From IMG/VR virus record IMGVR_UViG_3300046616_000314, positions 62,001-126,000 of that record: DNA of 64,000 bases. One strand, 5' to 3'. The translations under genes were made by a program, and so were the position numbers. The notes under the pieces are model-generated. The model had not been told where the DNA came from and did not search any database. It saw only the letters and a program-made list of their open reading frames with translations. Shown one piece after another: positions 13,314-62,496 of the stretch. Numbering within the stretch: position 1 is the first letter of the stretch; the number at the start of each line of letters is the position of its first letter.

Positions 13314-14200
13314 TAATAGCCGTCGTCTTCGCGAGGATCGAAGACGCCTGGAACATAGATGTCATCCAATGCCAGACGCTTGACCATTTTGACATTGTGC
13401 AGCAACGGTTCGCCATCGGCTCCATCGTCTTCTAGCTCTGTTCCCTGGACAAGGAAGATATCGCGCTTACCCTTAGCGGTAGCCGAGAACAAACCGTCCA
13501 TCGTTCCATTGAGCGTGTTTTCATTGATGCCGTCCCCGATTGCCCAACGTTGTTCTTCCATTTCCCAATCGGCATGATAGGCGGATACGCCCTTTTCCCA
13601 CACCGGATGACCTTCTTCGCGAGAGGCTAGGAAATTCTGTGAACGTTCATCATCGCGCCATAGACCGAAACGAACATAATATCTGCCTAGCATGTAGGCT
13701 TTGTTTTCAGGCGTGAACATTTGTTTGACATATCGTCTTGCCAAATCAAGTGCGCCAGGAAGCGGAATAGAGATCAGTTCGCCACGATATGTGCCGCCCG
13801 TGTCTACGATATTGCCATCTAGATCGAAGACAACGCGCAGATGATCAGGTTCAGCTTTTGAACCACGATTGGGGTGATATGAGATAGCCGGGACGTTGTA
13901 GATAGCAAAAGTGTTCTTGTGCTTGTCTAGGTATTTTTGGACGGTTACTTGCGTCCAGCTACGCCAGCCAAAATAAGCATAGAATGCAAGCCACTCAGGG
14001 TTTTGCATTACCTTGCCTTCAATGCGCTTTAAGTCTGCCCCAGAGGGTGGCCACGTCTCAGGGGTGAAATCGGGCTTGCCTTCGGCATCCATTTGCGAGG
14101 ATGTCTTGTAGTGGGGAGCTAAGTCCTGCCAATAAGAACGCCCAACGTCTGTCGGATGCTCGCGATAATACTTTTCTTCAAACAGTTCTGACAGGCGCAT
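13310..14200 (-). CDS. Putative R-S-E type ADP-ribosyltransferase-fold protein with capsid-targeting-like N-terminus
   Basis: MRLSELFE; YVRFG..RS.N, EKGVSAY and GADGEPLL spacing suggests an R-S-E triad. Confidence 0.5.
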   Translation of the reverse strand: MRLSELFEEKYYREHPTDVGRSYWQDLAPHYKTSSQMDAEGKPDFTPETWPPSGADLKRIEGKVMQNPEWLAFYAYFGWRSWTQVTVQKYLDKHKNTFAIYNVPAISYHPNRGSKAEPDHLRVVFDLDGNIVDTGGTYRGELISIPLPGALDLARRYVKQMFTPENKAYMLGRYYVRFGLWRDDERSQNFLASREEGHPVWEKGVSAYHADWEMEEQRWAIGDGINENTLNGTMDGLFSATAKGKRDIFLVQGTELEDDGADGEPLLHNVKMVKRLALDDIYVPGVFDPREDDGYY

Positions 14201-14203
14201 CCA

Positions 14204-14497
14204 TTATTTATTATGGGCGTGGAAGCATCCGTTTGCGATGTTGAACATGACACATCCACCGATGAAACATAGGACACTGATGCCGATGAAAGAATCAACT
14301 CCCGTTGCATCATACAGAGTGAAACCAGCGACCAGAAGGAACGGTGACGTGATGAAAAGAATGGCGCCTGCGATCAGGGCGACGTAACCCGTGATGGCTT
14401 CGGATCGTGCGCGCTCGCGGATCATGATCAAGGATCGGTTAGCCAATCCATGCAACATTTTATTGAGAACATTGATGTTGTGGGAAACCATTTTCAT
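14204..14497 (-). CDS. Small membrane protein
   Basis: Two hydrophobic segments; coupled operon. Confidence 0.65.
   Translation of the reverse strand: MKMVSHNINVLNKMLHGLANRSLIMIRERARSEAITGYVALIAGAILFITSPFLLVAGFTLYDATGVDSFIGISVLCFIGGCVMFNIANGCFHAHNK
14205..14210 (-). promoter_or_regulatory. T4-late-like promoter element TAAATA
   Basis: TAAATA-ATGG-ATG (gene start 14200). Confidence 0.7.
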
Positions 14498-14745
14498 ATT
14501 CTTTCCTCAACATGAACGAAGAAAATTGTTGCAACGGCGATCACCAGGGCGACCACTGCTAAGAACACGTTATGATGCGCTGCACTCATGCCAAACATCA
14601 TGCCAAGCATGATGATAAACACGTGTTTCACTGCGAGCAATATGTGAGTGTATCTCGCAGTTTTGGTGGCGTTTTCGCGTTGACGCAAACGATCTTTGTT
14701 GCGTTGCTCATTGATGAGCCTAACGAATTCGTCTTTTACAAACAT
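14494..14745 (-). CDS. Small membrane protein
   Basis: Two C-terminal hydrophobic segments. Confidence 0.65.
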   Translation of the reverse strand: MFVKDEFVRLINEQRNKDRLRQRENATKTARYTHILLAVKHVFIIMLGMMFGMSAAHHNVFLAVVALVIAVATIFFVHVEERI

Positions 14746-15053
14746 TATTTCATACCGAAGAAGTGTGCCCGATGCACGGTCTTATAGGAATCCATTGCGT
14801 ATGCGGGTAAATGCGAAACCCCAACGATATCGAACATCGCTTTCGATCCCGCGCCGAAGAACAGCAAATGGATTAAGAGCAAGCCCAATCCGACACCTGT
14901 GACGATGGGCGATTGGATATGGATACCGAAGGCGAGGATCAGACTCAACACGATAGTACCATGCACTAACACCAACACTGTGCCTATCGCAACACGGAAT
15001 TGGTTTTCGGCTTCTTTGCGTATCGATTTATATTCGTAGCGAACTTCGTTCAT
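14745..15053 (-). CDS. Small membrane protein
   Basis: Two hydrophobic segments. Confidence 0.65.
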   Translation of the reverse strand: MNEVRYEYKSIRKEAENQFRVAIGTVLVLVHGTIVLSLILAFGIHIQSPIVTGVGLGLLLIHLLFFGAGSKAMFDIVGVSHLPAYAMDSYKTVHRAHFFGMK

Positions 15054-15798: not shown

Positions 15799-15799
15799 A

Positions 15800-20241: not shown

Positions 20242-20756
20242 CGACTTAGTACATATTGGATTTTGTAGGGGTTTAGATATCTATCCTTACCACTGTCGGC
20301 TATAGTCCAACGTACTGCATCGATTTCTGCATTGAAAAATCTATCCGAAAATGCATTCGCATGAGCTTTGGATTTGAATTTAATTTCCGTCCAACGATGG
20401 CGAAGCAATATGCGATGAACCTTCGGAGACTCGTCCGTAACTGTCGCAATAGGATATGGAATATTGTTACGCAACCATTCATCTATTTCATCGGGAAACG
20501 ATGCATAACGATCAGCCCACAAATCCATATCGTATTCGCCCATCAGGCGTTCGCCATAATAGCGCACCCATTCACTAGGAACGTAAAGGCTATACATATA
20601 GGGAACTAATCGATACAGTGGATTAGAAACTCTATGCTTTACAATAGCTTCGGGAGGCTTTGCATAGTAAGTAATACTTTCAAAGGGGCAGAGACGTTGC
20701 CAGCCTTTAGTGAAAGTCTTCGTTCTAGTAAAAGTTTGTTTGGTTGTAATGTACAT
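20238..20756 (-). CDS. Hypothetical protein, possible divergent FKLK-family member
   Basis: IDEWLRNN; IKFKSKAHANAFSDRF. Confidence 0.55.
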   Translation of the reverse strand: MYITTKQTFTRTKTFTKGWQRLCPFESITYYAKPPEAIVKHRVSNPLYRLVPYMYSLYVPSEWVRYYGERLMGEYDMDLWADRYASFPDEIDEWLRNNIPYPIATVTDESPKVHRILLRHRWTEIKFKSKAHANAFSDRFFNAEIDAVRWTIADSGKDRYLNPYKIQYVLSR

Positions 20757-21390
20757 TTTGAATCAAAAGGTTTTCTACCCGAGCATGTAGAGTTTCGAGA
20801 GTATCATCGTTTTCGATAACGTGGTCAAATTTATTTTGGTAGCTCAACCATGCCCACTCTGATTCGTGAATTTCGTATTTGTCAGCCATCATCACGATAG
20901 CCGGTTCATATCCGCGTGCAGCAGCTTCAGCCGTTGCGAACCATTCGGGTTCATTACCGCGCTTCACTCTGGCGACCTTGCCTTGGAATTGATGGACCAA
21001 TTCTAATTCGTTCGGGAAGCGTCCATCAGTGATTACGACATCGGCATTCGCAGGCATGTTCAACAGCTTGCGTTCGATATTCATGATCCAGATATCGGGG
21101 TTGAAATGTTTCCGAAACAGATTGGTCCCCACCAACTGCATAGCCTTGCGAGGCGTGAATTCGGGAATGTCTAATTTATTAGACCACCAGGGATCGACAG
21201 TTTCACGCCACTCGCGGCTTTCTTTGGTGAGACCTTCTAGAAGCTCACGATCCCAAATGAAGATGGTAGCCAGGGTGTCTTTTAGACTATCGGCGAAACT
21301 GAACGCGGTGTAACCGTGCTGTTCAACTAGATATGTACCGGCGGTGTCTTTACCGCTGCCTTGAAACCCAACCAACCCAATGAGACGCAT
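20725..21390 (-). CDS. Deoxynucleoside monophosphate kinase (T4 gp1-like)
   Basis: GFQGSGKDT P-loop, FADSLKD, SREWRE, TPRKAMQLVGT, ITDGRFPNE. Confidence 0.9.
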   Translation of the reverse strand: MRLIGLVGFQGSGKDTAGTYLVEQHGYTAFSFADSLKDTLATIFIWDRELLEGLTKESREWRETVDPWWSNKLDIPEFTPRKAMQLVGTNLFRKHFNPDIWIMNIERKLLNMPANADVVITDGRFPNELELVHQFQGKVARVKRGNEPEWFATAEAAARGYEPAIVMMADKYEIHESEWAWLSYQNKFDHVIENDDTLETLHARVENLLIQNVHYNQTNFY

Positions 21391-21451
21391 TTAACTATCC
21401 AAGAAAGAATAGTTAACAATACCTCACTGGGTTGACATTTGCATTATTTAA

Positions 21452-44633: not shown

Positions 44634-44639
44634 TAAATA
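44634..44639 (+). promoter_or_regulatory. T4-late-like promoter element TAAATA
   Basis: TAAATA-ATCG-ATG (gene start 44644). Confidence 0.7.
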
Positions 44640-44643
44640 ATCG

Positions 44644-46230
44644 ATGCGCTATCGTGACCTTCTCAAAGAATCTCCCCAGACTGGTTTTAAGCCCGGCTTT
44701 GAGCAATGGTTCGCGGGTTCTAAAGTCGTAGACAAATCCGGTCAGCCTTTGGTTTGCTATCACGGTACGTTCAGAGATTTTGCGGAATTCCAATATAACG
44801 ACAACGGTTGGGCGGGCTCTGGCTTCAATCGTCTAGGGTTCTGGTTCGATACCGATCCCAAGACCCCAGGCTGGCTTGCGGGCGACGAAGAGGGCTATGG
44901 CATCGGAGACGGTGGAAACATCAAGCCTTGCTATCTGTCGATCAAAAAACCTCTCGTCATGTCGGGTGACATGATCTGGAACGAGGACTTGGACGAGCTT
45001 CGTCAGCTTCGTAAAAATGTTTCAGCAACGTATGCGGCGCGGCGCGCAGCCAAGAACGGTGATTGGAACTTCGGACAATTAGACCTAACCTATCGCGATG
45101 CGTCGAGAGCATTTGACGCGGCTATGGAAAAGATGATGCAGAATGACGGTTGGACCCGGATCATGCGTCTTCTTCCGAACGGCATTAAGTCAACTACTGA
45201 GGAAGTCGCTGCGTTCCAGGCTGAATGCATCGCCGAAGGTTACGACGGTATTCATTTCGTGGATACGATGGCTGACTCAGGAACCCGTGACTATGCGCCT
45301 ACTGATTGGTGGTTGGCATTCCATCCAAATCAAATCAAGTCAGTCTTCGCTTCACAATTCAATCCACAGTCCACCAACATGAGCGAAGCTCAAGAGTTGG
45401 ATGAAATCATGGAAATCCCTGATTTTGACGATGACATCAACAATCAACGTCGTTCGCTGAATTGGGGAGAAAAAATTAAAGATTCCAAGAAAGTTGGAAA
45501 GATCGGACCCTATAATTTGGTCGTTCATCGCAGTGCTTGGGGTGATGAATATCTTTTGCTAGATAATCAGAAACACCCAATGGGCAAGGCGACTGTCTCA
45601 AAATATTCAGGTGGCTTCTATCGCGTCGGACACATTTGGTTTGATCCGACCGTCCGAGGCAAGGGCTACGGCTATTTGTTCTATCGTTTTCTGATCGACA
45701 AAGGCATGAAAGTCATCACTGACACCGATCAAACACGGTTCAGCCGAGGCGTGTGGTCTAAGCTGGCGCGCGAAGGTTTCGTGTATGAATATTTTGAAGA
45801 TGATACGCTAGGGTCCAAGGTTACGGACACCCAGGATTTCTACGGCAATCGTCTATCTAGATTGGCGGCTGTTAAGCCCGGCACGGTCAAAGAGAGTGCG
45901 CTTGTTGAGAAGACGATCTTCATTCCAGACTCATCGGGTATGAATTTCGTGGTAATGAAAAATCCGTCGAAGGCACAATATTTTAAATTGCTGCATCCCG
46001 ACTCAGACCTGAAGGGTTTGATTTCGGGCAAGGATTTCTATGTGTGGGCAGCATATCACGCTCACCATGGGCAGATTGCGCACGGGTTGGGTCTAGGCGA
46101 GGATGCGTATCGTATCTTTGTTCGATACAACGCGATCCTCGCTCATCCATCGTTGTTCCCGGCTATTCGAGATAATCCGCAGATGAAATATCTATATGGT
46201 CCGTCTGGACCGAATCTAGAAAGCGAGTAA
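44644..46230 (+). CDS. Polyvalent protein: ART-PolyVal-like ADP-ribosyltransferase + GNAT acetyltransferase + unknown domain
   Basis: WFAGSKVVDKSGQPLVCYHGT..GFWF..CYLSIKKP..GYDGI..AFHPNQIKS; GHIWFDPTVRGKGYG..TDTDQT..GVWSKL. Confidence 0.75.
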   Translation: MRYRDLLKESPQTGFKPGFEQWFAGSKVVDKSGQPLVCYHGTFRDFAEFQYNDNGWAGSGFNRLGFWFDTDPKTPGWLAGDEEGYGIGDGGNIKPCYLSIKKPLVMSGDMIWNEDLDELRQLRKNVSATYAARRAAKNGDWNFGQLDLTYRDASRAFDAAMEKMMQNDGWTRIMRLLPNGIKSTTEEVAAFQAECIAEGYDGIHFVDTMADSGTRDYAPTDWWLAFHPNQIKSVFASQFNPQSTNMSEAQELDEIMEIPDFDDDINNQRRSLNWGEKIKDSKKVGKIGPYNLVVHRSAWGDEYLLLDNQKHPMGKATVSKYSGGFYRVGHIWFDPTVRGKGYGYLFYRFLIDKGMKVITDTDQTRFSRGVWSKLAREGFVYEYFEDDTLGSKVTDTQDFYGNRLSRLAAVKPGTVKESALVEKTIFIPDSSGMNFVVMKNPSKAQYFKLLHPDSDLKGLISGKDFYVWAAYHAHHGQIAHGLGLGEDAYRIFVRYNAILAHPSLFPAIRDNPQMKYLYGPSGPNLESE

Positions 46231-50816: not shown

Positions 50817-50844
50817 AATGTACCACGGTCTTAGGCGTTGTCAA
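50817..50844 (-). promoter_or_regulatory. sigma70-like promoter
   Basis: TTGACA-N16-TACATT with TGG before the -10 box. Confidence 0.7.
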
Positions 50845-52529
50845 TAGTCCAAGAAATCATCAAGCGTCTTCGTATATACGGTTGGACCAAATGCACTAAC
50901 CTTGTCGAGTATTGGAACAAGACCCGCAAAGTCGGCTCTCTTATAATTGCCAGCTTCCAAGCATGATCTGATCAACAAATCAAATTTGTCTCTTGAGAAA
51001 CCTTGCTTAGCACCCTCAATAATCAATGCATAAAGGAATTGCAACGATCTATCGCCAAAGAATCGACGCGCATGACTATGTGCTTGTGACCAAAAGCCAA
51101 TTAACTCTTTGGGATCGGTACAAGCCGTCATGACGGTAGATTGGTGATTATATAGCAGATACTTGAAATATTCGGGATTTTCGCGCACATACTTCACAGG
51201 ATCGATTGTTCTATTCCACCAAATACTTAACAGGTGTGCTCGTTGACCGGGCTCAAGGAAATCGGCAGCCAATATCTTAGCCATCAATTCTTGAGTCATA
51301 TGGAAATCTCGTTTACCGAGTTGGTACACGGTGTCATCGGCATTGTCCTTCAACTGTTGAAGATATTCTTCATCAGTGAACGGAATCAAATTGTACGGAT
51401 AAGCCCAGGCGAAATATTTTTCCTTGATTTCGTCCTGAATAGATACGGGAAGAATACCCCAACCGAGTGTTGTAAAAATGCTCACGTGAGAGCCTTCTAG
51501 AACATCGCGGACCAACTTAAGTTCTTCTGGTGTAAATTTACCGCCTTGTTGATATCGCTTGGTAAGAAATTTCTTTAGGGCAAGCGGATTGTCAATATAC
51601 ATATCAACAGGTGTCGGAGTACGATCAACAAGGCGCCGATTACGGATGACATCTACCTCGCGCAAGCCTTTCTTAGAGAAAAACAGTGCTTGAACAGGTT
51701 CATTGGTGTGGATGATACCTTCACCCTCGACATCAACGCAACCATCGTAGCCTAACTGCATGAACAGTTTCGACCAACGAGTTGTCAGCTTGATACCATA
51801 TTCGCGGCGTTGAGCACGAATCGCATCAACAACATTTTCTTTACCGAAACTCAGCAATTCTTTCCAGATCGGTGAGTCCATTGTAGTTTTGTGGACCGCG
51901 TTGTAAGTTGCAATTTTATCGTCAAGGTCTTCTAGACTCTTGACTTGATTGAAATTCAACGGATACCAATATTTGTTAACATACATTTGAATTGGCGTAG
52001 CGTGTGCCATTTGAAAATCATCCGTGTCACTTGCTAGTTCACGTGTGATATTCCAAATCATACCACCAGCCGATTTATTAGTCGCTGAATTTTTCGCTTT
52101 TTCTACGATATGCTTGAATCGAAATTCATAATTTTCATTCTTGACGATAATATCGTGTAGCTTACGAACGTCTTCGTCCATTTGTCTCTCTGTATAAAGA
52201 GAGAAATCAATCATGTTCCCGGTTGCCTGAACAACGTACATATAGGCACGATCTTTGGCGAACGGAACATTGCCTTGTGCCATAAGAACGTAATCAACGG
52301 GATAGACATAGATACCCAGAGGCGTACCGTAGCTATAAGTCGGATTGATACCGATCTTTGTGCCTTTTGTATGGGGAGATTTGTTTCTCACCATCCCTTG
52401 ATCCATGCTGTCAACGAACGAGACAAACATAGTCGGATCATTCGCATATTGCTTCAGTTCTTCAAGGCTATCGATTTTTTTGTTGATATGGGCGTTACGA
52501 CGCTTTTCAAACAATTCAAAAGCGCGCAT
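50841..52529 (-). CDS. RRNP-family protein 1 (putative packaged ART-fold effector)
   Basis: MRAFELFE; FVSF, KIGINP..TPLGIYVYP, LGYDG.VD..GIIH.NEP.QA.FF. Confidence 0.7.
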   Translation of the reverse strand: MRAFELFEKRRNAHINKKIDSLEELKQYANDPTMFVSFVDSMDQGMVRNKSPHTKGTKIGINPTYSYGTPLGIYVYPVDYVLMAQGNVPFAKDRAYMYVVQATGNMIDFSLYTERQMDEDVRKLHDIIVKNENYEFRFKHIVEKAKNSATNKSAGGMIWNITRELASDTDDFQMAHATPIQMYVNKYWYPLNFNQVKSLEDLDDKIATYNAVHKTTMDSPIWKELLSFGKENVVDAIRAQRREYGIKLTTRWSKLFMQLGYDGCVDVEGEGIIHTNEPVQALFFSKKGLREVDVIRNRRLVDRTPTPVDMYIDNPLALKKFLTKRYQQGGKFTPEELKLVRDVLEGSHVSIFTTLGWGILPVSIQDEIKEKYFAWAYPYNLIPFTDEEYLQQLKDNADDTVYQLGKRDFHMTQELMAKILAADFLEPGQRAHLLSIWWNRTIDPVKYVRENPEYFKYLLYNHQSTVMTACTDPKELIGFWSQAHSHARRFFGDRSLQFLYALIIEGAKQGFSRDKFDLLIRSCLEAGNYKRADFAGLVPILDKVSAFGPTVYTKTLDDFLDY

Positions 52530-54418
52530 TAGAATACTCCCTCATCATCGTCGGCTTCAGCCCGATCAGTTTCAAACTTGAGCATTTCCATCACGTTGTT
52601 GAGACCAAGCTTTTCAGCACGATCATAGACGGTTGCCCAATACTTGTTCAGACCTTCCATGCGGTCGGACTGACGAATTTCAGGATGAGTGCGAGCCATT
52701 TCTTCATTGATCAAATGAATCAAGTTTGAAATCTGACCCTGTTGGCAATCATTTGCGTATAACAACAGAGAACCCATCCAAGCGGGAGTACGATCAGCCA
52801 AGCTAACAATGTCGTATACATTGCGTTTGACGAATTGGTAATACTTCATGAAGTCTTGAGGCGTGCGGCGTTGACGCAGGAATGCCATAAGAATCGGTTG
52901 GCTAATCTTATAAATGTTGCCATTGAACAGCCCCGGTTTGCTTCCAATGAAATCAAAGATCATCTTCTGGTGATTGACGATGCCCTGATTGACAATCCCG
53001 GCGATAAGATCAGCCGAGGCGCGGGCATCGTTCACGACTGCCTCAAAGACATGCGGGCGACGTAGAATAGCTCTATAAAAACCCTTGGCGTGTCCACTGA
53101 AGTAATGTGGATCGAAGTTTTGCTGATAGTTCAAAACCTGATTGACCATTTGTTTATCTGTGAAGTCAATCGCATCCAACGGGAAACCAATTCGTTCCCA
53201 GTGTTCGCGAACATAGGACTTCACTTCAGCAGGGAACATCGGATAGATGTCGGCAAATACTTCATTGTCATGATTATAGCCGATGACTTCGGTCATCATC
53301 TTGATTTCGTCGGGAGTATACTCGCCCTTGTGCTTATGAATCCATGCCTTGAACAGCTTAGGCTTTTCAATGAAAATCGTAGTCTGACCTTTTGGCTTCT
53401 CGTGCTGGACGTTGTTGAGGACTTCCAATTCTTGGATACCAGCCTTGGAGAAGAACACGGCTTGAGTGGGTTCATTCTCGTGAATAATTCCCTTACCTTG
53501 TAGGTCAGATGCTCCCGAATAGCCAAGGTCACGGAATAGTTTAGACCAATTGGCGATGCCCTTGGTGGATTGGATGCGCCGGAATTCTTCGACCGCAGCC
53601 AATACTTGTTCCGGTGTAGCCTTATTCAGAGCGTCTACAGCACCTTTGAAGTTTACTTCAAGCAACTCACGAATGGTCATCGGCGTTTTTTCAGTCGCCA
53701 CGGATGATTGTCGGTTGAATGCTGCTTTATATTTTTCAACGTCTTCGGCTGTCTTGAGCGTAGAAGAATGAGGAATTAGCTTACGATCATTCGGCGGAAT
53801 ACCGGTTTCAAAATCAGCACTCTTCCATGTCGCCGAAATCAGCATATTCATAGGCGAACGCTGATTGTACATGCCATGGCGCCGCCCTGACAACAGGCGA
53901 GTCAAATTCCAAATCTTCCCACCAGGGGTTCTAGATGTTGAAGTAGAATCAGCAAGTAATTGCATTTCTTGAAATTGCGTATCGCTCATGAGGTTCATGG
54001 CTCGCAACTTTGCGGCATCCTTGTCGTAGTCTTCTTGCGAATACGTGTGTAAGTCCAACACATTACCGCGCGCCTTGACGACATACAGGTATGGGCGTTT
54101 CGCAGCGAAAGGAACGTCGTTGACAAATTTCTTCAAAACGTAATCGACCGGATAGCAGTAGATACCCACCGGGGTATTGTAATTGGTCTTCGGGTTGATG
54201 CCGATCTTAGAGCCGCGTTGGTTCGCCAGTGTTCCCTTGGAACGAATACCGCCAAACGTTTCGTCACCGATGCTGCGAAGAGAGTGCGCGCCGACATCAT
54301 GCGTGAACGAAACGTACACGTCGGGATGACCTTCATATTTTCGCAAGGCATCGATAGCGGAAACCTTGGGATTCAGGTCTGGATTTCGACGTTTCTCGAA
54401 TAGTTCAAATGCGCGCAT
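52529..54418 (-). CDS. RRNP-family protein 2 (putative packaged ART-fold effector)
   Basis: MRAFELFEKRRNP; same conserved motifs. Confidence 0.7.
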   Translation of the reverse strand: MRAFELFEKRRNPDLNPKVSAIDALRKYEGHPDVYVSFTHDVGAHSLRSIGDETFGGIRSKGTLANQRGSKIGINPKTNYNTPVGIYCYPVDYVLKKFVNDVPFAAKRPYLYVVKARGNVLDLHTYSQEDYDKDAAKLRAMNLMSDTQFQEMQLLADSTSTSRTPGGKIWNLTRLLSGRRHGMYNQRSPMNMLISATWKSADFETGIPPNDRKLIPHSSTLKTAEDVEKYKAAFNRQSSVATEKTPMTIRELLEVNFKGAVDALNKATPEQVLAAVEEFRRIQSTKGIANWSKLFRDLGYSGASDLQGKGIIHENEPTQAVFFSKAGIQELEVLNNVQHEKPKGQTTIFIEKPKLFKAWIHKHKGEYTPDEIKMMTEVIGYNHDNEVFADIYPMFPAEVKSYVREHWERIGFPLDAIDFTDKQMVNQVLNYQQNFDPHYFSGHAKGFYRAILRRPHVFEAVVNDARASADLIAGIVNQGIVNHQKMIFDFIGSKPGLFNGNIYKISQPILMAFLRQRRTPQDFMKYYQFVKRNVYDIVSLADRTPAWMGSLLLYANDCQQGQISNLIHLINEEMARTHPEIRQSDRMEGLNKYWATVYDRAEKLGLNNVMEMLKFETDRAEADDDEGVF

Positions 54419-54422: not shown

Positions 54423-54428
54423 TATTTA
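54423..54428 (-). promoter_or_regulatory. T4-late-like promoter element TAAATA
   Basis: TAAATA-AGTC-ATG (gene start 54418). Confidence 0.7.
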
Positions 54429-56219
54429 TTAGTCCATTTTATGCGCGTCACCGTAAACTTGCGTCACCGGATTTGCTTGATGAATTGCTCGCTTGATCTC
54501 ATCTACATACTTGGGAGCATGAGCCGTAGTCCATGCAAGCAAATTGTTCCACCATGCGCCTTCGTCAGTCGGATGATATGAGAATGCGGGTTCCGAACTG
54601 CGAAGCATATTGGTAACGAGTTGGTCATAGCCTTTGCTCATAGCATATTGAAGACAGCCCATAAGGAAAGTTGGTCCCTTGGCAGATATACCGCTGGAAA
54701 CTAGGGCTCGTTCGACCATTTTACCGATTTCGACAAAGGTTTCCGGGTCTTCAATTCGGCGCATTCCCACTGTTTGAGCAAATGGTGACATTTTGGAGAA
54801 TTCTTCTTTATTATTCTTTATGAACTGATTGACGGCTTCGGTATTTTTAACAATTGACGCCAGTTCGTAGAATACTAAGCTCTTATTACCAGCCGACATA
54901 TAATTTTTGTTCTTTGATTGCATCAAATACAAGAACGTTTCAGGCGTAATGACAAACTTGTCAATTTTGTTGAGAAGGCTTGGGTTACGCATGACCTGAT
55001 AAGCAATCTCGTGTTGCGTCAAGCCAGGAACACATTTGGGATCGAACACACCCTCATACCAGCGAACACGAATATCCTTGCGAATTGATTCGGGAAGCAG
55101 GTTCCAATTGATTACGCGAATAGCTTCTGGGTTCTCCCAAATGAAACTATTAATCAGGTTAACTTCTTCTTCGTTGAATGGCTTGCGGCTATGCTTCTCT
55201 AGATATTTGGCGAACTTCAAATAATCGTAGTACCATTCGGTATCAACGCGATACGGCTTGTGCGAATAGGTGATGTTGTGGATAGTCTCGACTTCACTGA
55301 AGCTTTTCTTATTGAAGAACAACGCTTGTGTGGGTTCGTTCTGGTGAATGATACCATCACCATTATCGATCAGACCATCATAGCCTAGACCTTGGAAAAC
55401 TTTGGACCATCGGGTTGTTGGTTTAGAACCCGAAATGGCACGGAACTTATTCGCGATCTCCGCAAACTCTTCTGGTGACGTGTTTTCGAATTGATCGTAC
55501 ATGCCATTTTGACGAAGGCTGTCACGGAAATTTGTGAGCAACGCTTTCTTCAACGCAACGCCAGTACGATCAGCGATTACTTCCTTATAAGACCACGGTG
55601 AATTCAAATAAATCTTGGCGATGAATTCGTGTAGGCCATCGGTGTATCGCAAATGTTGTGCTTCGAAGGTAGGAAACTCGCGGCAGATGTTGAAGAAATA
55701 TCCGCCAGGAGATTGCACTTTGGCTTCGTAACTGGCTCGATTTACAAACTCTTTCCAGTCATCGTCATCAACGTCTGGAACGTCGGCTTGCAATGCGGCG
55801 CAATCGTTCTCTAAATCATCTTGAGAATACTTTTGTAGATCAAGCATGTTGCCCGTAGAGCGAATGACCTGAATGTATGGACGGTCGGCAGCATAGGGAA
55901 CATCCGGTTCACCGCTGCTTCGATCAAGTACGTAAGAAATTGGGTAGGCGTAGATACCTAGAGGCGTGCCGTGGTCATATTTCGGATTGATGCCGATCTT
56001 GGAGCCGCGCGAGTTATGGCTTTTGCCTTTGGCGTTGATGCCCGTTCCGGTGTTGTACGGTTCAGCGGCAACGTCAGGATTGGATTTCGTACCAACATCA
56101 TCGGTGAAACTGACGTAAACGTCATCGCGACCCTTGTACTTCTTTAAGGAGTCCAGGGCAGAAACCTTGGGGTTCTGTTCGGGATTACGTCGGGCTTCAA
56201 GGATTTCGTATGCGCGCAT
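54429..56219 (-). CDS. RRNP-family protein 3 (putative packaged ART-fold effector)
   Basis: MRAYEILEARRNP; same conserved motifs. Confidence 0.7.
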   Translation of the reverse strand: MRAYEILEARRNPEQNPKVSALDSLKKYKGRDDVYVSFTDDVGTKSNPDVAAEPYNTGTGINAKGKSHNSRGSKIGINPKYDHGTPLGIYAYPISYVLDRSSGEPDVPYAADRPYIQVIRSTGNMLDLQKYSQDDLENDCAALQADVPDVDDDDWKEFVNRASYEAKVQSPGGYFFNICREFPTFEAQHLRYTDGLHEFIAKIYLNSPWSYKEVIADRTGVALKKALLTNFRDSLRQNGMYDQFENTSPEEFAEIANKFRAISGSKPTTRWSKVFQGLGYDGLIDNGDGIIHQNEPTQALFFNKKSFSEVETIHNITYSHKPYRVDTEWYYDYLKFAKYLEKHSRKPFNEEEVNLINSFIWENPEAIRVINWNLLPESIRKDIRVRWYEGVFDPKCVPGLTQHEIAYQVMRNPSLLNKIDKFVITPETFLYLMQSKNKNYMSAGNKSLVFYELASIVKNTEAVNQFIKNNKEEFSKMSPFAQTVGMRRIEDPETFVEIGKMVERALVSSGISAKGPTFLMGCLQYAMSKGYDQLVTNMLRSSEPAFSYHPTDEGAWWNNLLAWTTAHAPKYVDEIKRAIHQANPVTQVYGDAHKMD

Positions 56220-56223: not shown

Positions 56224-56229
56224 TATTTA
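56224..56229 (-). promoter_or_regulatory. T4-late-like promoter element TAAATA
   Basis: TAAATA-AAGG-ATG (gene start 56219). Confidence 0.7.
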
Positions 56230-57990: not shown

Positions 57991-57995
57991 ATTAC

Positions 57996-58023
57996 ACTCT
58001 ACTATACTCTAAAATTCTGTCAA
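57996..58023 (-). promoter_or_regulatory. sigma70-like promoter
   Basis: TTGACA-N16-TAGAGT. Confidence 0.6.
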
Positions 58024-58027
58024 GCAC

Positions 58028-58514: not shown

Positions 58515-58545
58515 CCCAAACGCATACTAAAATGCGCGGAAGGTG

Positions 58546-59925
58546 TCAATATTTTCGTTTTTGGAGCAACGCCGAATAATTGACCGGATGGCGCACTAGT
58601 TCTTTTTCCAATTCGCTAACGAATTTTTTGATCGCCAGCTTCCAACGCTTCGGGGCATTGTCTTTCAGCGCACTAAAGAAACTACTAGTGAAACCAACGT
58701 GACCCTTCTCGGCTTCCGTCAATCCAACGAACACATTGATAGCATCCCGCAAGGTCGGAGGGGCAGGAAGATAAACGCTGTATTTTTTAATCATTTCCAA
58801 CAGATCATAGAAGTCAGCGATTGCCGAAATAATTTGCGGATCGAATTCAACCGGAGAGGTCAAATAAGGTTCCGCAACACTTCCGTCCGTAGGATGTTTC
58901 TTCTTTTGATCGGGATGGCGCAACACGTTGTATTGGATCATGTGTTGCATTTCATGATGCAAGGTTTTCTTGATACGATCCAATGCAATTTCCAACTCAC
59001 CTAACTTCGCTCCGTTAGGATAATTCTTTAGCGCACCGTTGGTTGGCTGAATGACAATAGAATTCATATCAGGATAATATGCAGCCATGGTCGTTTCGTT
59101 TTCGGGTTTCCACTGCATACCGATGAAGAAATAGCCTTTCCGCACTGGGGCTAGTTTCTGATAGCTTAGAGGTAAGTCTGTAATATCAAATGTGAATGTT
59201 TTGAGATCAAATTTCTCTGGATAATCTTCTTTCGGAATTCTGACGCCATGTTTCTTACATACGTCTTGGAATTCCTGCCACAGAGCCGCATTCTCTTTGG
59301 TCTGGAACATCGGTGTCAGGTCGCGCCATTGATCCCGAGCGTGCCACAAAATCTGTGTGACGACCCAATGATAAGCGAGGACCATAGCAAGAGGCGGGAC
59401 AGCGATCACGCCTTCCATTAGCACGTTGGTATGGGCTTCCAAAGCTTCGGTGAACGTCGCAGCATTTTTAAATTTTTCAAAATGGGGATCGTAGGTAACG
59501 GTTGCCTCGATTTCGTGGCGCCCTGCCAGGATTTGAAGACAGATGCGGTGATGCCCTTCCATGACCCAGTACATACCGTTGGGTAGGGCGACCAATTCAG
59601 GAAGCGGAGCGGTATCCCAATGACTTAGAACTTTTTGGAGATTTTTCAGCCCAACACCGTTTTGATCTTGCGTAACGAGCTTTTCAACCGGAATGAGTTG
59701 GGTCTTGTGGGTTTGGGTTACGATTTCCTCATAGGGAGCCTTACCCATGAGCACCTTCAAATACTCTGGGTTCATGTCTTTCTCGTCGTGGTTCAAACCG
59801 AATGAAGAGAAAGGAATGTCAATATCTTCCCAATTTTTGGTTTCGCGATTGGAATGTGTTTGTGCAAAGAAACGCAGTAACTTAAGCAGGTTCTTTTGTT
59901 CGTCTGAAGTGAAAGGCTTAAGCAT
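58546..59925 (-). CDS. Two-domain protein: ParB/Srx-like domain + zincin (HExxH) domain
   Basis: IPVEKL..WVMEGHHRI..EIEATV; TLHHEMQHMIQ..YLTSPVEFD. Confidence 0.7.
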   Translation of the reverse strand: MLKPFTSDEQKNLLKLLRFFAQTHSNRETKNWEDIDIPFSSFGLNHDEKDMNPEYLKVLMGKAPYEEIVTQTHKTQLIPVEKLVTQDQNGVGLKNLQKVLSHWDTAPLPELVALPNGMYWVMEGHHRICLQILAGRHEIEATVTYDPHFEKFKNAATFTEALEAHTNVLMEGVIAVPPLAMVLAYHWVVTQILWHARDQWRDLTPMFQTKENAALWQEFQDVCKKHGVRIPKEDYPEKFDLKTFTFDITDLPLSYQKLAPVRKGYFFIGMQWKPENETTMAAYYPDMNSIVIQPTNGALKNYPNGAKLGELEIALDRIKKTLHHEMQHMIQYNVLRHPDQKKKHPTDGSVAEPYLTSPVEFDPQIISAIADFYDLLEMIKKYSVYLPAPPTLRDAINVFVGLTEAEKGHVGFTSSFFSALKDNAPKRWKLAIKKFVSELEKELVRHPVNYSALLQKRKY

Positions 59926-61510
59926 CTTCGGTACCTGTCAATCCATAACGAGAAAGTTGTAATATCTGTTCGGCACGTTCGTCTTTGCCATAGGTGAGAC
60001 GGAGGACACCTAAAACTTTAGAGCGAATTTGCGCACTACGAGAACTAATATGAGCGTATTCAGTGAGAATATCATTGAAATACGCCAGAGTAATGTAATC
60101 ATGCTTATCGATGATCACTGAAGCAACTGACCGGAGCCAACTATACTCATCGTCTCGCAATAGTAATTCGCGAGCAAATAGTTCTGGAATAGTATTGCTA
60201 TGAATAAAACTATGAAGCATTTGCGCATACTCGCGCGGATTCGTGATATTCGAGATAGCACGGGTTTTGACAACATTCGGGAAGAATCGAATGAATGTCG
60301 AATGATCCTTCAGAAATTTTAACGAATCAAATTCGAAATCGGCTCCACATTCAACCGCGAGTGTTTTAAATCTGCCCGTCTTCTGACTATTGTCCAGCAC
60401 TTCTTTTGCAAATGTATCGAGTAATTGCACGTATTGTTGGCGTGTAATAAGCGGTTTCATGAAACGGGTCATGATCCAAGGTTCTTCAGCCACGGCGGCG
60501 AAGATTTCTTCTGGTGATACGTTAGGTAGGTAATACGGATAGATGACGTTGACTGCCCACGAATCTTTCAACCACTGTTGAATAATGGTCGGCACGTTTT
60601 TCCAATTGAATTGGAGGTTGTCTAGGAATGTATCATCGGAACGGAAATCACCAATGTAATCCATGATCTGAGTGTTCTCAGTCTCATTGGTATTACCTTT
60701 ACGATTATTAAGAAACTTGAAGAATGAATTTTGGTTCTTCAACCAGATGTCATATAGCGATGGGGTTCTTTTGGGAGCGGGTGTGTTGTGAATGACTTCG
60801 ACAACCCGGAAGGATTTTTTACTAAAGAACAACGCTTGGTTGGGCTCGTTTTTGTGAATGATCCCATAGCCAGGATCAACCAGACCGGCGTATCCAAGTT
60901 GACTGAAGATACGTGACCACCGAGTTGTCATCTTGGCTTGTACGGCAGATTTTTCCGCTGTTTTCTTATCGAGTGCAAACATGCGAGTGATGTTGAACAT
61001 CTTACCCGCCCACGTGTCTGTAGAAGCGTTATATTCGCCATCATCGATAATGTGTTCATCGTCATAACCGAGAGCCTTCAGCTTCTCGATATCTTCGTTC
61101 ATGTCGCGTTCTGTATACAGTTCAAAATCCAGCATCTTGCCGGTTGGTTCCAGAACGTAAATGTATGGACGCTCGCCAGCGAAAGGAACTTTCACTTCTA
61201 CAGCAGAAGAATTTTTCAAGACATAATTGACGGGGTAGGCGTAGATACCCAAAGGCGTACCATAACCGTATGTAGGGTTGATCCCAATCTTAGGTCCGCG
61301 AGCATTGTGGACATGACCTTTGGCTCTTACGCCATCTTCGGTCTTTTTAACTTTTTGATTGCCTGCATTGTTGGCAGATAGAACGCCGACATCGGCAGTG
61401 AACGATAGAAACACGTCTTTGTCTGTGTACTTGCGCAGTTGTTTCATAACCGGAGCCTTCTGATTTTGTTCAGGATTCCGGCGGGCTTCGATCAGTTCAT
61501 GAAAACGCAT
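59918..61510 (-). CDS. RRNP-family protein 4 (putative packaged ART-fold effector)
   Basis: MRFHELIEARRNP; start moved to the TAATG overlap at 61510. Confidence 0.7.
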   Translation of the reverse strand: MRFHELIEARRNPEQNQKAPVMKQLRKYTDKDVFLSFTADVGVLSANNAGNQKVKKTEDGVRAKGHVHNARGPKIGINPTYGYGTPLGIYAYPVNYVLKNSSAVEVKVPFAGERPYIYVLEPTGKMLDFELYTERDMNEDIEKLKALGYDDEHIIDDGEYNASTDTWAGKMFNITRMFALDKKTAEKSAVQAKMTTRWSRIFSQLGYAGLVDPGYGIIHKNEPNQALFFSKKSFRVVEVIHNTPAPKRTPSLYDIWLKNQNSFFKFLNNRKGNTNETENTQIMDYIGDFRSDDTFLDNLQFNWKNVPTIIQQWLKDSWAVNVIYPYYLPNVSPEEIFAAVAEEPWIMTRFMKPLITRQQYVQLLDTFAKEVLDNSQKTGRFKTLAVECGADFEFDSLKFLKDHSTFIRFFPNVVKTRAISNITNPREYAQMLHSFIHSNTIPELFARELLLRDDEYSWLRSVASVIIDKHDYITLAYFNDILTEYAHISSRSAQIRSKVLGVLRLTYGKDERAEQILQLSRYGLTGTEDA

Positions 61511-62247
61511 TAAATTTTCTCCGCAACGGAGAAGAAATTGCTTCCATCTTTTTTGAGTAATTTCAGATCGGTCTTGAGCATACGCCAGCATTCGGAAGGA
61601 TGGATCGTCCCCGCATGGGCGACGTGCATACCACGGTTGATCGCTTCGATCTTCAAATGATCGGGCATCTTCTTCAGCACACGTTTGCCGCCTTGAGCGA
61701 AGTAAGCGTACTCGCCATCAAGAACACGTTTGCGTTGATTTTCGGTCATGCTCCAACCGATGTAATCGTACAGTTGTCTACCGGCATAATCTGATTGCGG
61801 CAGAGAACATTTATAACCAACGGTGACGGGATGCCCATAGCGACCCATTTGTGTGATGGGCTCAGAATTGTGGCTATAAAATTCACCGATGGAATCTTCG
61901 TCAGGCTGCACGTCTACGAGATCGGCGCCTTTGATAACGAACACATATCCATAAGGATCGGTTCGCATATCGTCTTTGAAATCGCCAGCGGCTTCTTGCA
62001 TGGCATGAGTAAAATTGCCACCAAGGGCATACATGATGGCGTATGCGATATCGGATGTAATATAGACGCGCCCGGCAACAGGAGCAAGCATACCCTTGCC
62101 TTGGGTCTCGCGACCTTTCAGACCTTCGGTAGCAACGACATTGGCTGCACGAGTCGATGACGTGCCGTGATAGTACGTTTTTGCACGAACGTTATCGTCC
62201 GGTGCAGCCTCGTCAATTTCGGTACCAAATAATTCGTGAAAACGCAT
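61510..62247 (-). CDS. H-Y-type ADP-ribosyltransferase-fold protein with capsid-targeting-like N-terminus
   Basis: MRFHELF..IDE; YYHGTS..EGL..VYITSDIAYAIMYA..YVFVI..PDED. Confidence 0.65.
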   Translation of the reverse strand: MRFHELFGTEIDEAAPDDNVRAKTYYHGTSSTRAANVVATEGLKGRETQGKGMLAPVAGRVYITSDIAYAIMYALGGNFTHAMQEAAGDFKDDMRTDPYGYVFVIKGADLVDVQPDEDSIGEFYSHNSEPITQMGRYGHPVTVGYKCSLPQSDYAGRQLYDYIGWSMTENQRKRVLDGEYAYFAQGGKRVLKKMPDHLKIEAINRGMHVAHAGTIHPSECWRMLKTDLKLLKKDGSNFFSVAEKI

Positions 62248-62250
62248 CCA

Positions 62251-62496
62251 TTATTTATAGTGGAGTGCGAACGCCTCGTTAGCTAATCGTTTGGCTTCGA
62301 CCATAGCATCTTCTTTGAGCAAGAACGTTTCGCCTACTGCATGTCTAGTCTCAGGCGAATGGATAACGTACGTGCGATTGCTCAGTTCAAGGACATCGAA
62401 ACGAATACGAACATCGTCGTATTGTTCATCATTCTCGCGGTCGATTTCATCGGGGAAGACGTGCCAGTGATCGGCAATGGTATTGGGCGGAATCAT
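62251..62496 (-). CDS. Hypothetical protein
   Basis: SD GGAG; stop codon overlaps the late promoter. Confidence 0.55.
   Translation of the reverse strand: MIPPNTIADHWHVFPDEIDRENDEQYDDVRIRFDVLELSNRTYVIHSPETRHAVGETFLLKEDAMVEAKRLANEAFALHYK
62252..62259 (-). promoter_or_regulatory. T4-late-like promoter TATAAATA
   Basis: TATAAATA-ATGG-ATG (gene start 62247). Confidence 0.75.

What the first reader, a model, noticed from the sequence alone, without database searches (positions are those of the whole stretch)
14200..62259. Five late promoters with invariant TAAATA-N4-ATG geometry: probable leaderless late mRNAs
Seen in sequence: TAAATA lies exactly 4 nt before the start codon at 14205-14210(-), 44634-44639(+), 54423-54428(-), 56224-56229(-) and 62252-62257(-). 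Each ATG is followed by an Arg codon (CGC/CGT), and there is no room for a Shine-Dalgarno. Established: T4 late promoters are a lone TATAAATA -10 element read by gp55, with initiation a few nt downstream. Inference: transcription starts at or next to the A of ATG, so this effector class is translated from leaderless mRNA. That could let it escape, or exploit, phage-induced changes to canonical initiation.
Basis: partly seen in the sequence, partly recalled or inferred. Interest (0 to 1): 0.7.

Follow-up and report, generated by a model that had tools for sequence, protein, structure and literature searches.

The report
Late promoters abutting start codons
In this 561-kb uncultivated phage, about fifty late genes, including five for proteins probably packed into the capsid, have a T4-type late promoter box 4-5 bases before their ATG, so their mRNAs probably start at the start codon; transcript 5' ends have not been mapped.

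Summary
There are five TAAATA-N4-ATG sites in the window (0.53 expected by chance), each followed by an Arg codon and with no Shine-Dalgarno.

The window lies in a 561-kb phage genome from a rhizosphere metagenome. Genome-wide, TAAATA-Nk-ATG spikes only at k=4 (24 sites) and k=5 (28 sites), against about 3 expected per spacing. 49 of these 52 sites open an ORF of at least 60 aa.

The same box, [A/C]TAAATA with no -35 element, also lies 13-80 nt upstream of Shine-Dalgarno-led genes for portal, tail sheath, baseplate, capsid and protease. Almost none lie 8-12 nt upstream. The genome encodes a gp55-family late sigma factor.

With T4 numbering, N5 places the A of ATG at +1. Leaderless late mRNAs are therefore the best reading, but no RNA data exist to map the 5' ends.

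The Arg codon comes from the protein, not the promoter. It belongs to an N-terminal tag, MRxxE(L/I)(F/L)E, that resembles the T4 Alt and internal-protein capsid-targeting peptides. Unrelated proteins carry this tag, including operon-internal copies that do have a Shine-Dalgarno.

The geometry is not specific to effectors. It recurs in many uncultivated IMG/VR phages. It is absent from T4, Syn9, PA5oct and Phosso.

The parts
14205..14210 (-). TAAATA late-promoter box, 4 nt before the ATG at 14198-14200
   Evidence: Its last three bases plus the next A form the stop codon of a weakly supported 97-aa upstream ORF (14204-14497).
13310..14200 (-). 296-aa gene starting MRLSELFEE (capsid-targeting-like tag); function unknown
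   Evidence: No Pfam or PHROG family. The Atlas search gave no convincing match.
44634..44639 (+). TAAATA box, 4 nt before the ATG at 44644
44644..46230 (+). 528-aa gene starting MRYRDLLKE; N-terminal ART-PolyVal ADP-ribosyltransferase domain
   Evidence: Pfam PF18760, E=3e-19, 70.6 bits against a cut-off of 31.2.
54423..54428 (-). TAAATA box, 4 nt before the ATG at 54416-54418; it directly follows the stop codon of the upstream gene
52529..54418 (-). 629-aa gene starting MRAFELFEKRRN; member of the 'RRNPEQNPKVS' family
56224..56229 (-). TAAATA box, 4 nt before the ATG at 56217-56219
   Evidence: The nearest upstream same-strand gene call is 491 nt away.
54429..56219 (-). 596-aa gene starting MRAYEILEARRN; conserved alpha/beta N-terminal domain plus a C-terminal helical-repeat domain; function unknown
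   Evidence: Alignments. Structure model with pLDDT 79.7. Fold searches matched only helical repeats.
62252..62257 (-). TAAATA box, 4 nt before the ATG at 62245-62247
   Evidence: It overlaps the stop codon of a weakly supported 81-aa upstream ORF.
61510..62247 (-). 245-aa gene starting MRFHELFGTE; probably has an ADP-ribosyltransferase-type fold (DarT / Arr / PARP-like). This is a lead only.
   Evidence: Atlas search: feature score 0.94, structure TM 0.59-0.61 by hit to DUF3990, DUF4433 and Arr clusters. No Pfam hit.
50841..52529 (-). Operon-internal paralog (562 aa) with the same tag, MRAFELFEKRRN. It is preceded by a Shine-Dalgarno (GAGGGAG, 7 nt before the ATG) and has no TAAATA.
59918..61510 (-). 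Operon-internal paralog (530 aa) starting MRFHELIEARRN. It is preceded by GGAG, 8 nt before the ATG, and has no TAAATA.
21445..21450 (-). Possible leadered TAAATA site, 54 nt upstream of gene 20725-21390(-). It is a weaker candidate because it is preceded by T rather than A or C.

Best explanation
TAAATA, in the fuller form [A/C]TAAATA[A/T/C] with no -35 element, is the late promoter of this phage. It is read by host RNA polymerase carrying the phage's gp55-family sigma.

The phage uses this promoter in two layouts:
- In about 65 cases the box lies 13-80 nt upstream of a gene with an ordinary Shine-Dalgarno leader. These genes include portal, tail sheath, baseplate, fibres, capsid and protease.
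- In about 50 cases, including the five in the window, the box lies 4 or 5 nt (rarely 6-7) before an ATG. Transcription then starts at, or within a base or two of, the A of AUG, and the gene is translated as a leaderless mRNA.

Steps shown here: the motif, its spacing statistics, its intergenic position, its presence in front of virion genes, the encoded sigma, the exclusive use of ATG, and the weak structure of the first 40 nt.

Steps inferred: the actual transcription start sites, and leaderless initiation by ribosomes.

The Arg codon belongs to a separate, protein-level signal. This is an N-terminal tag, M-R-x-x-(E/D)-(L/I)-(F/L/I)-x0-1-E, shared by unrelated proteins. It closely resembles the T4 capsid-targeting peptides of Alt (MELITELFDE) and IPII/IPIII (MKTYQEFIAE) and ends in the (L/I)-x-E motif. 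From general knowledge, T4-type prohead protease cleaves after that motif, and this genome encodes such a protease.

The five window genes are therefore most likely late-made, capsid-packaged, injected proteins. One is an ART-PolyVal ADP-ribosyltransferase and a second probably has an ART-type fold.

One likely consequence, which is inference only: without a Shine-Dalgarno, only transcripts that begin at the late promoter carry a translatable 5'-terminal AUG, so translation would be tied strictly to late promoter firing.
For: - Window: 5 sites against 0.53 expected.
- Genome, spacing spike: TAAATA-Nk-ATG counts are 24 at k=4 and 28 at k=5, against about 3.0 expected per spacing (Poisson P = 3.5e-14 and 6e-18). 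Of these, 22 and 27 open ORFs of at least 60 aa. The GTG and TTG counts at the same spacings are 2+2 and 0+1; only 2 of them (GTG at N5) open ORFs of at least 60 aa.
- Genome, position: only 46 of the 188 TAAATA copies lie inside gene calls. Distances to the next gene start are bimodal: 3-7 nt (51 sites) or 13-80 nt, most of those with a Shine-Dalgarno-like 4-mer in the leader. Only one site falls at 8-12 nt.
- The logo shows no information upstream of the box except A or C at the preceding position.
- In the leadered class, the 6th base after the box is A in 46% and a purine in 68% of sites. In the N5 class, the 5th base is a pyrimidine in 24 of 27 sites and the 6th is the A of ATG, which is a Y(-1)R(+1) start context.
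- T4 numbering: gp55 flips the bases at -12, -9 and -8 (PMC7892883). This places the last A of the box at -6 and the N5 ATG at +1.
- gp55-family sigma at genome 407851-408741(-): T4 gp55 E=4.5e-7; phrog_12791 E=2.9e-81 and phrog_234 E=1.7e-22; PDB 7d7c gp55 E=5.7e-7.
- Leadered-class genes include tail sheath, portal, baseplate wedge, fibre and virion proteins; boxes also lie upstream of the capsid and protease genes. Short-spacing genes include a 2251-aa virion protein, a tail-sheath-family protein (phrog_11196) and another virion protein.
- 24 of the 50 short-spacing genes have a divergent upstream neighbour, and in 10 of these the spacer is 60 nt or less. Two divergent pairs have only 23 and 27 nt between their ATGs, each gene with its own box.
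- The first 40 nt of the short-spacing genes are less structured: -3.4 against -5.3 kcal/mol, P=8e-7.
- Independent replication:
  - Six metagenome contigs that carry homologs show 8 of 8 N4 sites and 9 of 12 N5 sites opening ORFs.
  - Across IMG/VR, box-plus-tag patterns give 78 hits at N4, 66 at N5 and 29 at N7, but only 3 at N9.
  - In those 174 loci, with the seed matches excluded, TAAATA-Nk-ATG opens 46 ORFs at N4 and 97 at N5, against roughly 2-8 at the other spacings up to N14 apart from a shoulder of 23, 18 and 14 at N6-N8. Only 7 GTG/TTG starts occur at N4/N5.
  - Several of these loci encode a capsid protein 63-71% identical to this phage's.
- Tag: 18 of 50 short-spacing genes carry it, against 3 of 747 other genes. 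The T4 Alt and IP N-termini were read from the T4 genome. A Peptidase_S77 prohead protease is encoded. The capsid protein N-terminus contains LFE and LME motifs.
Against: - No transcript 5' end has been seen for any of these genes, because no RNA run was listed.
- With strict T4 spacing, an N4 site would start at the U of AUG. N4 sites therefore need initiation one base earlier than in T4.
- 11 of the 50 short-spacing genes, including three of the five in the window, directly follow a same-strand ORF whose stop lies in or next to the box. Termination-reinitiation could serve those genes.
- gp33 and gp45 homologs were not detected.
- The capsid gene's box is followed immediately by AAGGAG, which a start 5-6 nt downstream would leave out of the transcript. 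Not every TAAATA therefore needs to fire as modelled.
- Cultured relatives (T4, Syn9, PA5oct, Phosso) lack the geometry. No experimental precedent exists for gp55-type promoters.
- The host is unknown, so its capacity for leaderless translation is unknown.
Confidence: 0.7

Rival explanations
1. TAAATA is the late promoter, but these genes are translated mainly from longer transcripts. Ribosomes would reach the ATG either by termination-reinitiation after an upstream ORF whose stop lies in or next to TAAATAA, or by Shine-Dalgarno-independent loading on the A/U-rich box. On this view the closeness of box and ATG reflects genome compaction, not leaderless mRNA.
For: 11 of the 50 short-spacing genes have a same-strand ORF ending 12 nt or less before the ATG. 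Three of these are in the window: 14200, 54418 and 62247. At N4 sites where the box is followed by an A, that in-frame TAA sits one codon before the ATG. In more distant homolog contigs, the same gene family is translationally coupled and has no box.
Against: 24 of the 50 genes have divergent neighbours, 10 of them with spacers of 60 nt or less, and 8 more have gaps over 60 nt. The sharp N4/N5 spike, with almost nothing at 8-12 nt, is what a fixed distance from box to transcription start predicts; compaction would not produce it. ATG is used almost exclusively: 49 ATG, 2 GTG and 0 TTG, against 256, 50 and 60 in Shine-Dalgarno-led gene calls. Two of the upstream small ORFs in the window have weak coding scores.
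Confidence: 0.15
2. TAAATA at N4/N5 is chiefly a translation-initiation signal: a non-Shine-Dalgarno ribosome-binding element, perhaps read by ribosomes modified by the phage's own S21. Its resemblance to the late promoter would then be secondary.
For: The spacing to the ATG is strict, as it is for a ribosome-binding site. The phage encodes a ribosomal protein S21 homolog.
Against: The identical box, with the same flanking preferences, heads Shine-Dalgarno-containing leaders of virion genes 13-80 nt upstream, where it cannot act as a ribosome-binding site. It matches the gp55-type consensus and a gp55 homolog is present. No mechanism is known for a UAAAUA element placed 4-5 nt from AUG.
Confidence: 0.07
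3. The pattern is an artefact of chance or of recent duplication of one 5' cassette.
For: The five window genes share an N-terminal peptide, and two are paralogs.
Against: Nothing is conserved upstream of the box. Three of the five proteins are not detectably related to each other or to the paralog pair. About 50 unrelated genes share the geometry. It also recurs in independent metagenomes.
Confidence: 0.01

Closest known systems
Bacteriophage T4 late promoters (TATAAATA, read by gp55 with gp33 and the gp45 clamp)
   Same: A lone A/T-rich -10-like box with no -35 element, a gp55-family sigma encoded by the phage, and a position in front of virion genes. The core TAAATA is identical to the last six bases of the T4 octamer.
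   Different: The first two bases of the T4 octamer are not conserved; only A or C is preferred at the base before TAAATA. gp33 and gp45 were not detected. In T4 no TATAAATA lies closer than 13 nt to an ORF-opening ATG, whereas here nearly half of the promoter-like boxes lie 4-5 nt from the ATG.
Leaderless mRNAs of bacteria and temperate phages (lambda cI from PRM; Actinobacteria, Deinococcus, Caulobacter)
   Same: A -10-type element at a short fixed distance before the start codon, no Shine-Dalgarno, a near-obligatory AUG, and a weakly structured 5' end. These features are described in PMC4007540, PMC4633059 and the Caulobacter study listed. The lambda cI example is from general knowledge.
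   Different: Here the promoter is of the phage late gp55 type, not a housekeeping sigma type. The class also forms a large late regulon of a lytic-type huge phage. No experimental start sites exist.
T4 capsid-targeting sequence of internal proteins IPI-III and Alt
   Same: A peptide of about 10 residues at the N-terminus of otherwise unrelated proteins, ending in (L/I)-x-E. One cargo is an ADP-ribosyltransferase, as Alt is. A T4-type prohead protease and capsid protein are encoded. T4 internal proteins share only the CTS (PMC3012670).
   Different: The consensus is MRxxE(L/I)(F/L)E rather than MKTYQEFIAE. Packaging and cleavage have not been shown. In T4 these genes have Shine-Dalgarno leaders.
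Poxvirus late promoters (TAAATG initiator overlapping the start codon)
   Same: An A/T-rich late element of the TAAAT type placed at the ATG. This is an analogy from general knowledge and was not tested here.
   Different: The polymerase and host domain are unrelated. Poxvirus late mRNAs acquire a poly(A) leader by slippage. There is no evolutionary link.

Membership tests
T4-type (gp55-dependent) late promoter | Single A/T-rich -10-like box of the TATAAATA type, with no conserved -35 element | tested here: met
   The logo is [A/C]TAAATA[A/T/C], with about 0 bits of information from -30 to -2. The core six bases equal the T4 box, but the first two T4 bases are not conserved.
T4-type (gp55-dependent) late promoter | Phage encodes a gp55-family sigma factor | tested here: met
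   Located at genome 407851-408741(-). T4 gp55 E=4.5e-7; phrog_12791 E=2.9e-81; PDB 7d7c gp55 E=5.7e-7.
T4-type (gp55-dependent) late promoter | Co-activator gp33 and sliding clamp gp45 | tested here: inconclusive
   No match to Pfam gp45-slide_C. phmmer with T4 gp45 and gp33 found nothing, although the gp44 clamp loader is present at E=1.7e-21. Divergent homologs could have been missed.
T4-type (gp55-dependent) late promoter | Precedes late (virion) genes | tested here: met
   The box precedes portal, tail sheath, baseplate, fibres, capsid, protease and virion proteins.
T4-type (gp55-dependent) late promoter | Transcription starts about 6 nt after the box, late in infection and dependent on replication | not testable with these tools
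   No RNA run was listed, and the phage is uncultivated.
Leaderless mRNA | The transcript 5' end coincides with the start codon | not testable with these tools
   No RNA data. The only support is geometric: N5 puts the A of ATG at +1 by T4 numbering.
Leaderless mRNA | No Shine-Dalgarno, and the promoter -10 element at a fixed short distance from the start codon | tested here: met
Leaderless mRNA | Strong preference for AUG as start codon | tested here: met
   49 ATG, 2 GTG and 0 TTG at N4/N5, against 256, 50 and 60 in Shine-Dalgarno-led calls. In IMG/VR loci the counts are 143 ATG against 7 GTG/TTG.
Leaderless mRNA | Accessible, weakly structured 5' end | tested here: met
   Mean folding energy of the first 40 nt is -3.4 against -5.3 kcal/mol, P=8e-7. 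Part of this reflects lower GC content.
T4-type capsid-targeting / prohead-protease propeptide | Short N-terminal peptide shared by otherwise unrelated proteins | tested here: met
   Present on 18 of 50 short-spacing genes against 3 of 747 others.
T4-type capsid-targeting / prohead-protease propeptide | Ends in an (L/I)-x-E motif, and the phage encodes a gp21-type (Peptidase_S77) protease | tested here: met
   The tags end in LFE, ILE, LKE, IVE and similar. PF03420 E=5.5e-27. That gp21 cleaves after this motif is taken from general knowledge.
T4-type capsid-targeting / prohead-protease propeptide | The proteins are present in virions and are N-terminally processed | not testable with these tools
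   The phage is uncultivated and no proteome exists.
ART-PolyVal ADP-ribosyltransferase (gene 44644-46230) | Pfam PF18760 match above the gathering score | tested here: met
   70.6 bits against 31.2, residues 30-238. Catalytic residues were not examined.

The most novel reading that the evidence does not exclude
A whole clade of uncultivated large and huge T4-related phages runs a dedicated leaderless late regulon. The gp55-type box is fused to the AUG, so translation is licensed only by late promoter firing, because read-through transcripts lack any ribosome-binding site. The unit of box plus capsid-targeting tag acts as a portable 5' cassette that lets new effector genes be plugged into late expression and capsid packaging in one step. 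Phage-encoded ribosomal protein S21 may tune the balance between Shine-Dalgarno-led and leaderless initiation.
Probability: 0.3. Interest if true: 0.8.

Novelty: new variant of a known kind. Interest (0 to 1): 0.65.

Why it matters
gp55-type late promoters and leaderless mRNAs are each well known. I found no description of the two fused into one architecture, in any phage, in the literature I could search. The cultured models I examined (T4, Syn9, PA5oct, Phosso) lack it.

If the transcripts really start at the AUG, several things follow:
- This phage clade makes a large share of its late proteins, especially the proteins it packs into the capsid and injects, by a Shine-Dalgarno-independent route.
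- That would be a simple way to tie translation to late transcription, which may matter for proteins such as ADP-ribosyltransferases that could harm the producing cell.
- It would also bear on why huge phages carry ribosomal protein genes.

In practice, the box-ATG rule and the MRxxE(L/I)xE tag give a cheap sequence-only way to fix start codons and to flag candidate packaged effector proteins in metagenomic phage genomes.

Tried and rejected
- RNA evidence: two run searches listed only DNA runs from rhizosphere metagenomes.
- Close DNA relatives among GenBank phages: none found.
- Known relatives by sigma similarity (PA5oct, Phosso, 121Q) were fetched or scanned. They show no N4/N5 spike, and their commonest upstream hexamers are Shine-Dalgarno sequences. 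T4 and Syn9 also show no spike.
- The PA5oct transcriptome paper reports only sigma-70-like promoters.
- A second hexamer enriched near starts, TTCAAG, turned out to be the conserved C-terminal coding sequence of a tandem small-gene family, not a promoter.
- Sigma-70-like promoters and terminators are not enriched around the sites.
- gp45, gp33 and IF3 searches were negative.
- The structure model of the 596-aa protein gave only helical-repeat matches for its C-terminal half and nothing informative for the conserved N-terminal domain.
- The full metagenome contigs of the homologs could not be searched for a sigma factor.
- Low-GC homolog contigs (L081-L083) do not show the geometry.

Full report
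**1.

Shuffles give a mean of 0.53 and never more than 2. The spacers are ATGG, ATCG, AGTC, AAGG and ATGG. The next codon is CGC four times and CGT once. Each ATG opens a long ORF of 296, 528, 629, 596 or 245 aa. An alignment of the five regions shows nothing conserved upstream of the box. Downstream, the only conservation matches a shared N-terminal peptide.

**2. Where the window sits**

The window is bases 62001-126000 of a single 561,116-bp contig with 48% GC. The record is classed as a virus and estimated 97% complete. The only sequencing runs that hold it are rhizosphere metagenome DNA runs.

The genome encodes:
- a T4-type major capsid protein (PF07068, E=7.8e-78);
- a T4-type prohead protease (PF03420, E=5.5e-27);
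- a portal, tail sheath, baseplate and fibre proteins;
- a gp44-like clamp loader.

By similarity of its sigma factor, its nearest named relatives are Pseudomonas phage PA5oct, Sinorhizobium phage Phosso and the 121Q/RaK2 group.

**3. The motif across the genome**

The following counts use no gene calling. TAAATA followed by k bases and then ATG occurs 24 times at k=4 and 28 times at k=5, and 0-9 times at every other k from 0 to 20. About 3.0 are expected per spacing (Poisson P = 3.5e-14 and 6e-18). Of the N4 and N5 sites, 22 and 27 open ORFs of at least 60 aa. With GTG or TTG in place of ATG there is no spike.

Only 46 of the 188 TAAATA copies fall inside my crude gene calls, although those calls cover 84% of the genome.

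The distance from box to the next same-strand gene start is bimodal. It is 3-7 nt at 51 sites and 13-80 nt at about 65 sites, and only one site falls between 8 and 12 nt. A gap like this is expected if transcription starts about 5-6 nt after the box. Leaders of 2-6 nt would be too short to hold a Shine-Dalgarno and too long to count as leaderless.

The logo is [A/C]TAAATA[A/T/C], with no information further upstream, so there is no -35 element.

**4. Evidence that the box is the late promoter**

- The T4 gp55 protein finds one ORF, at genome 407851-408741(-), with E=4.5e-7.
- That ORF matches the PHROG families 'sigma factor for late transcription' (E=2.9e-81) and 'late sigma transcription factor' (E=1.7e-22). 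It also matches the solved gp55 chain 7d7c_F.
- Large genes preceded by a box and a Shine-Dalgarno-containing leader include tail sheath, portal, baseplate wedge, fibre and virion structural proteins. Boxes also lie upstream of the capsid and protease genes.
- The short-spacing class includes a 2251-aa virion structural protein, a tail-sheath-family protein (phrog_11196) and another virion protein.
- gp33 and gp45 homologs were not detected, so full membership of the T4 late-transcription system is not established.

**5. Geometry and the leaderless reading**

The cryo-EM study of the gp55 open complex reports flipped bases at -12 (an adenine), -9 and -8 (PMC7892883). This places TATAAATA at -13 to -6. 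On that numbering an N5 spacer puts the A of ATG at +1, and an N4 spacer puts it at -1.

In N5 sites the base before ATG is a pyrimidine in 24 of 27 cases, which gives the usual Y(-1)R(+1) start context. In the leadered class the 6th base after the box is A in 46% of sites and a purine in 68%.

Three further features match what is described for leaderless mRNAs:
- near-exclusive use of ATG: 49 ATG, 2 GTG and 0 TTG, against 256, 50 and 60 in Shine-Dalgarno-led calls;
- weaker predicted structure in the first 40 nt: -3.4 against -5.3 kcal/mol, P=8e-7;
- no Shine-Dalgarno.

Translational coupling cannot be the general explanation. 24 of the 50 short-spacing genes have a divergent upstream neighbour, and in ten of these the spacer is 60 nt or less. 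Two divergent pairs have only 23 and 27 nt between their ATGs, each gene with its own box (genome 392675/392699 and 324706/324734).

Coupling does remain possible for 11 of the 50 genes. Three are in the window (14200, 54418, 62247), where a same-strand ORF ends in or next to the box. The window sites at 44644 (divergent neighbour, 48-nt spacer) and 56219 (491-nt gap) cannot be coupled.

No RNA run was listed for this DNA. The start sites are therefore inferred, not observed.

**6. The Arg codon is a protein feature**

Genome-wide, about 25 genes start with MRxx(E/D)(L/I)(F/L/I), usually followed within one or two residues by E. The strict form of this tag is on 18 of 50 short-spacing genes and on 3 of 747 others.

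Two paralogs in the window carry the same N-terminus but sit inside operons. They are preceded by GAGGGAG or GGAG at normal Shine-Dalgarno distance and have no TAAATA (50841-52529 and 59918-61510).

Three of the five window proteins are not detectably related to each other or to the paralog pair. The shared peptide therefore behaves like a sorting signal.

Read directly from the T4 genome, Alt starts MELITELFDE and IPII/IPIII start MKTYQEFIAE. A T4 head review states that the internal proteins are diverse and share only a capsid-targeting sequence (PMC3012670). The tags here end in LFE, ILE, LKE, IVE and similar. From general knowledge, this (L/I)-x-E form is where the T4 prohead protease cleaves.

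In the head gene module:
- a small gene next to the portal starts MKIFEFVDE;
- the capsid protein has LFE at residues 4-6 and LME at residues 51-53.

I therefore read the five window genes as late-made, capsid-targeted and probably injected proteins.

**7. What the five genes encode**

- 44644-46230 has an ART-PolyVal ADP-ribosyltransferase domain (Pfam, 70.6 bits).
- 61510-62247 resembles DarT, Arr and PARP-type ADP-ribosyltransferase clusters in the Atlas search (feature score 0.94, TM about 0.6 by hit). This is a lead, not a proof.
- 52529-54418 and 54429-56219 belong to a family with 83 metagenomic homologs. The family's N-terminus, M(R/K)xxE(I/L)xEARRNPEQNPKVS, is strikingly conserved. 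The structure model (pLDDT 79.7) has an alpha/beta N-terminal domain with invariant K74, Y90, H292, E295 and Q298, plus a helical-repeat C-terminal half. Fold searches gave no functional match.
- 13310-14200 remains unknown.

**8. Comparative evidence**

The geometry is absent from T4: no TATAAATA lies closer than 13 nt to an ORF-opening ATG, and the leader peak is near 28 nt. It is also absent from Syn9, PA5oct and Phosso.

It is present in uncultivated phages:
- Six metagenome contigs that carry homologs (GC about 40%, from several samples) show 8 of 8 N4 sites and 9 of 12 N5 sites opening ORFs. The boxes often sit at the head of operons of tagged genes.
- A degenerate pattern for box plus tag finds 78 IMG/VR stretches at N4, 66 at N5 and 29 at N7, but only 3 at N9. 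Many are on contigs of 200-580 kb.
- Within those 174 loci (1.54 Mb), with the seed matches excluded, TAAATA-Nk-ATG opens 46 ORFs at N4 and 97 at N5. The counts at the other spacings up to N14 are roughly 2-8, apart from a shoulder of 23, 18 and 14 at N6-N8. Only 7 GTG/TTG starts occur at N4/N5.
- Several of these loci encode capsid proteins 63-71% identical to this phage's, and proteases about 57% identical.

Some of these loci are near-duplicates from related samples, so the counts overstate the number of independent lineages. Even so, the architecture is clearly shared by a clade.

**9. Verdict**

The boxes are late promoters of the gp55 type (confidence about 0.9). It is likely, but not shown, that the mRNAs of the short-spacing class begin at or next to the AUG and are translated as leaderless messages (confidence about 0.7).

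- the spacing is N4 or N5, not invariant N4;
- the class is not restricted to effectors;
- the Arg codon belongs to a capsid-targeting-like tag.

I found no paper describing gp55-type promoters fused to start codons. The library is incomplete, though, and the Syn9 transcriptome paper was not retrieved. I rate this as a new variant of known kinds, of moderate to high interest.

Noticed in passing
window 16598(-), 34183(-), 37732(-), 38633(-); genome clusters at 0.5-5.6 kb, 127-130 kb and 362-385 kb: At least 60 tandem small genes (about 75-160 aa) end in a conserved C-terminus..EEDAxx(M/L)FKLKW. The coding sequence TTCAAG(T/C)TGAA is followed by the next gene's ATG or GTG, which overlaps the stop codon (ATGGCCATGA). 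This is a very large paralog family with overlapping stop-start junctions.
   Followed up: partly
genome 216637-216792(+), outside the window: The phage encodes a ribosomal protein S21 homolog (PF01165, E=6e-17, above the cut-off). No IF3 was found. This may bear on the balance between Shine-Dalgarno-led and leaderless initiation.
   Followed up: no
genome 392675(-)/392699(+) and 324706(-)/324734(+), outside the window: Two divergent gene pairs have ATGs only 23 and 27 nt apart. Each gene has its own TAAATA box at N4 or N5, so the two promoters are interleaved back to back.
   Followed up: partly
genome 52785, 181514, 225478, 282793, 317900 and 474518; also the leader of the window 21450(-) site: A TGTCAA(C/G) motif lies 2-4 nt upstream of a subset of the TAAATA boxes (about 13 nt at 317900), and inside one leader. 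It could be a second regulatory element.
   Followed up: no
genome 336265-336286(-), capsid gene upstream region: The TAAATA box before the major capsid gene is followed immediately by AAGGAG. A start 5-6 nt after the box would therefore exclude the Shine-Dalgarno. Either this box is not used, or the capsid gene is translated from an upstream transcript.
   Followed up: no
L084:3337-5232(+): In a related metagenome contig, the genes of the RRNPEQNPKVS family sit next to a 631-aa gene that combines an Acb1 domain (PF23474; from general knowledge an anti-CBASS nuclease) with ART-PolyVal. This fits an anti-defence role for the neighbourhood.
   Followed up: no
L088 (PA5oct NC_071039 179881-180267): PA5oct gp213 lies divergent from the head maturation protease. 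It has a TAAATA-N5-ATG at 180252 that opens MKIKEIILE, five codons inside the annotated start. This is the one PA5oct ORF that pairs a tag-like N-terminus with a TAAATA-N5-ATG box.
   Followed up: partly
W03 (phage 121Q) 121.9-131.3 kb, minus strand: Eight repeats of TAAATATAGTATAATG (one variant copy) recur at intervals of about 0.8-2.4 kb. This suggests a tandem gene family with a conserved 5' cassette in 121Q.
   Followed up: no
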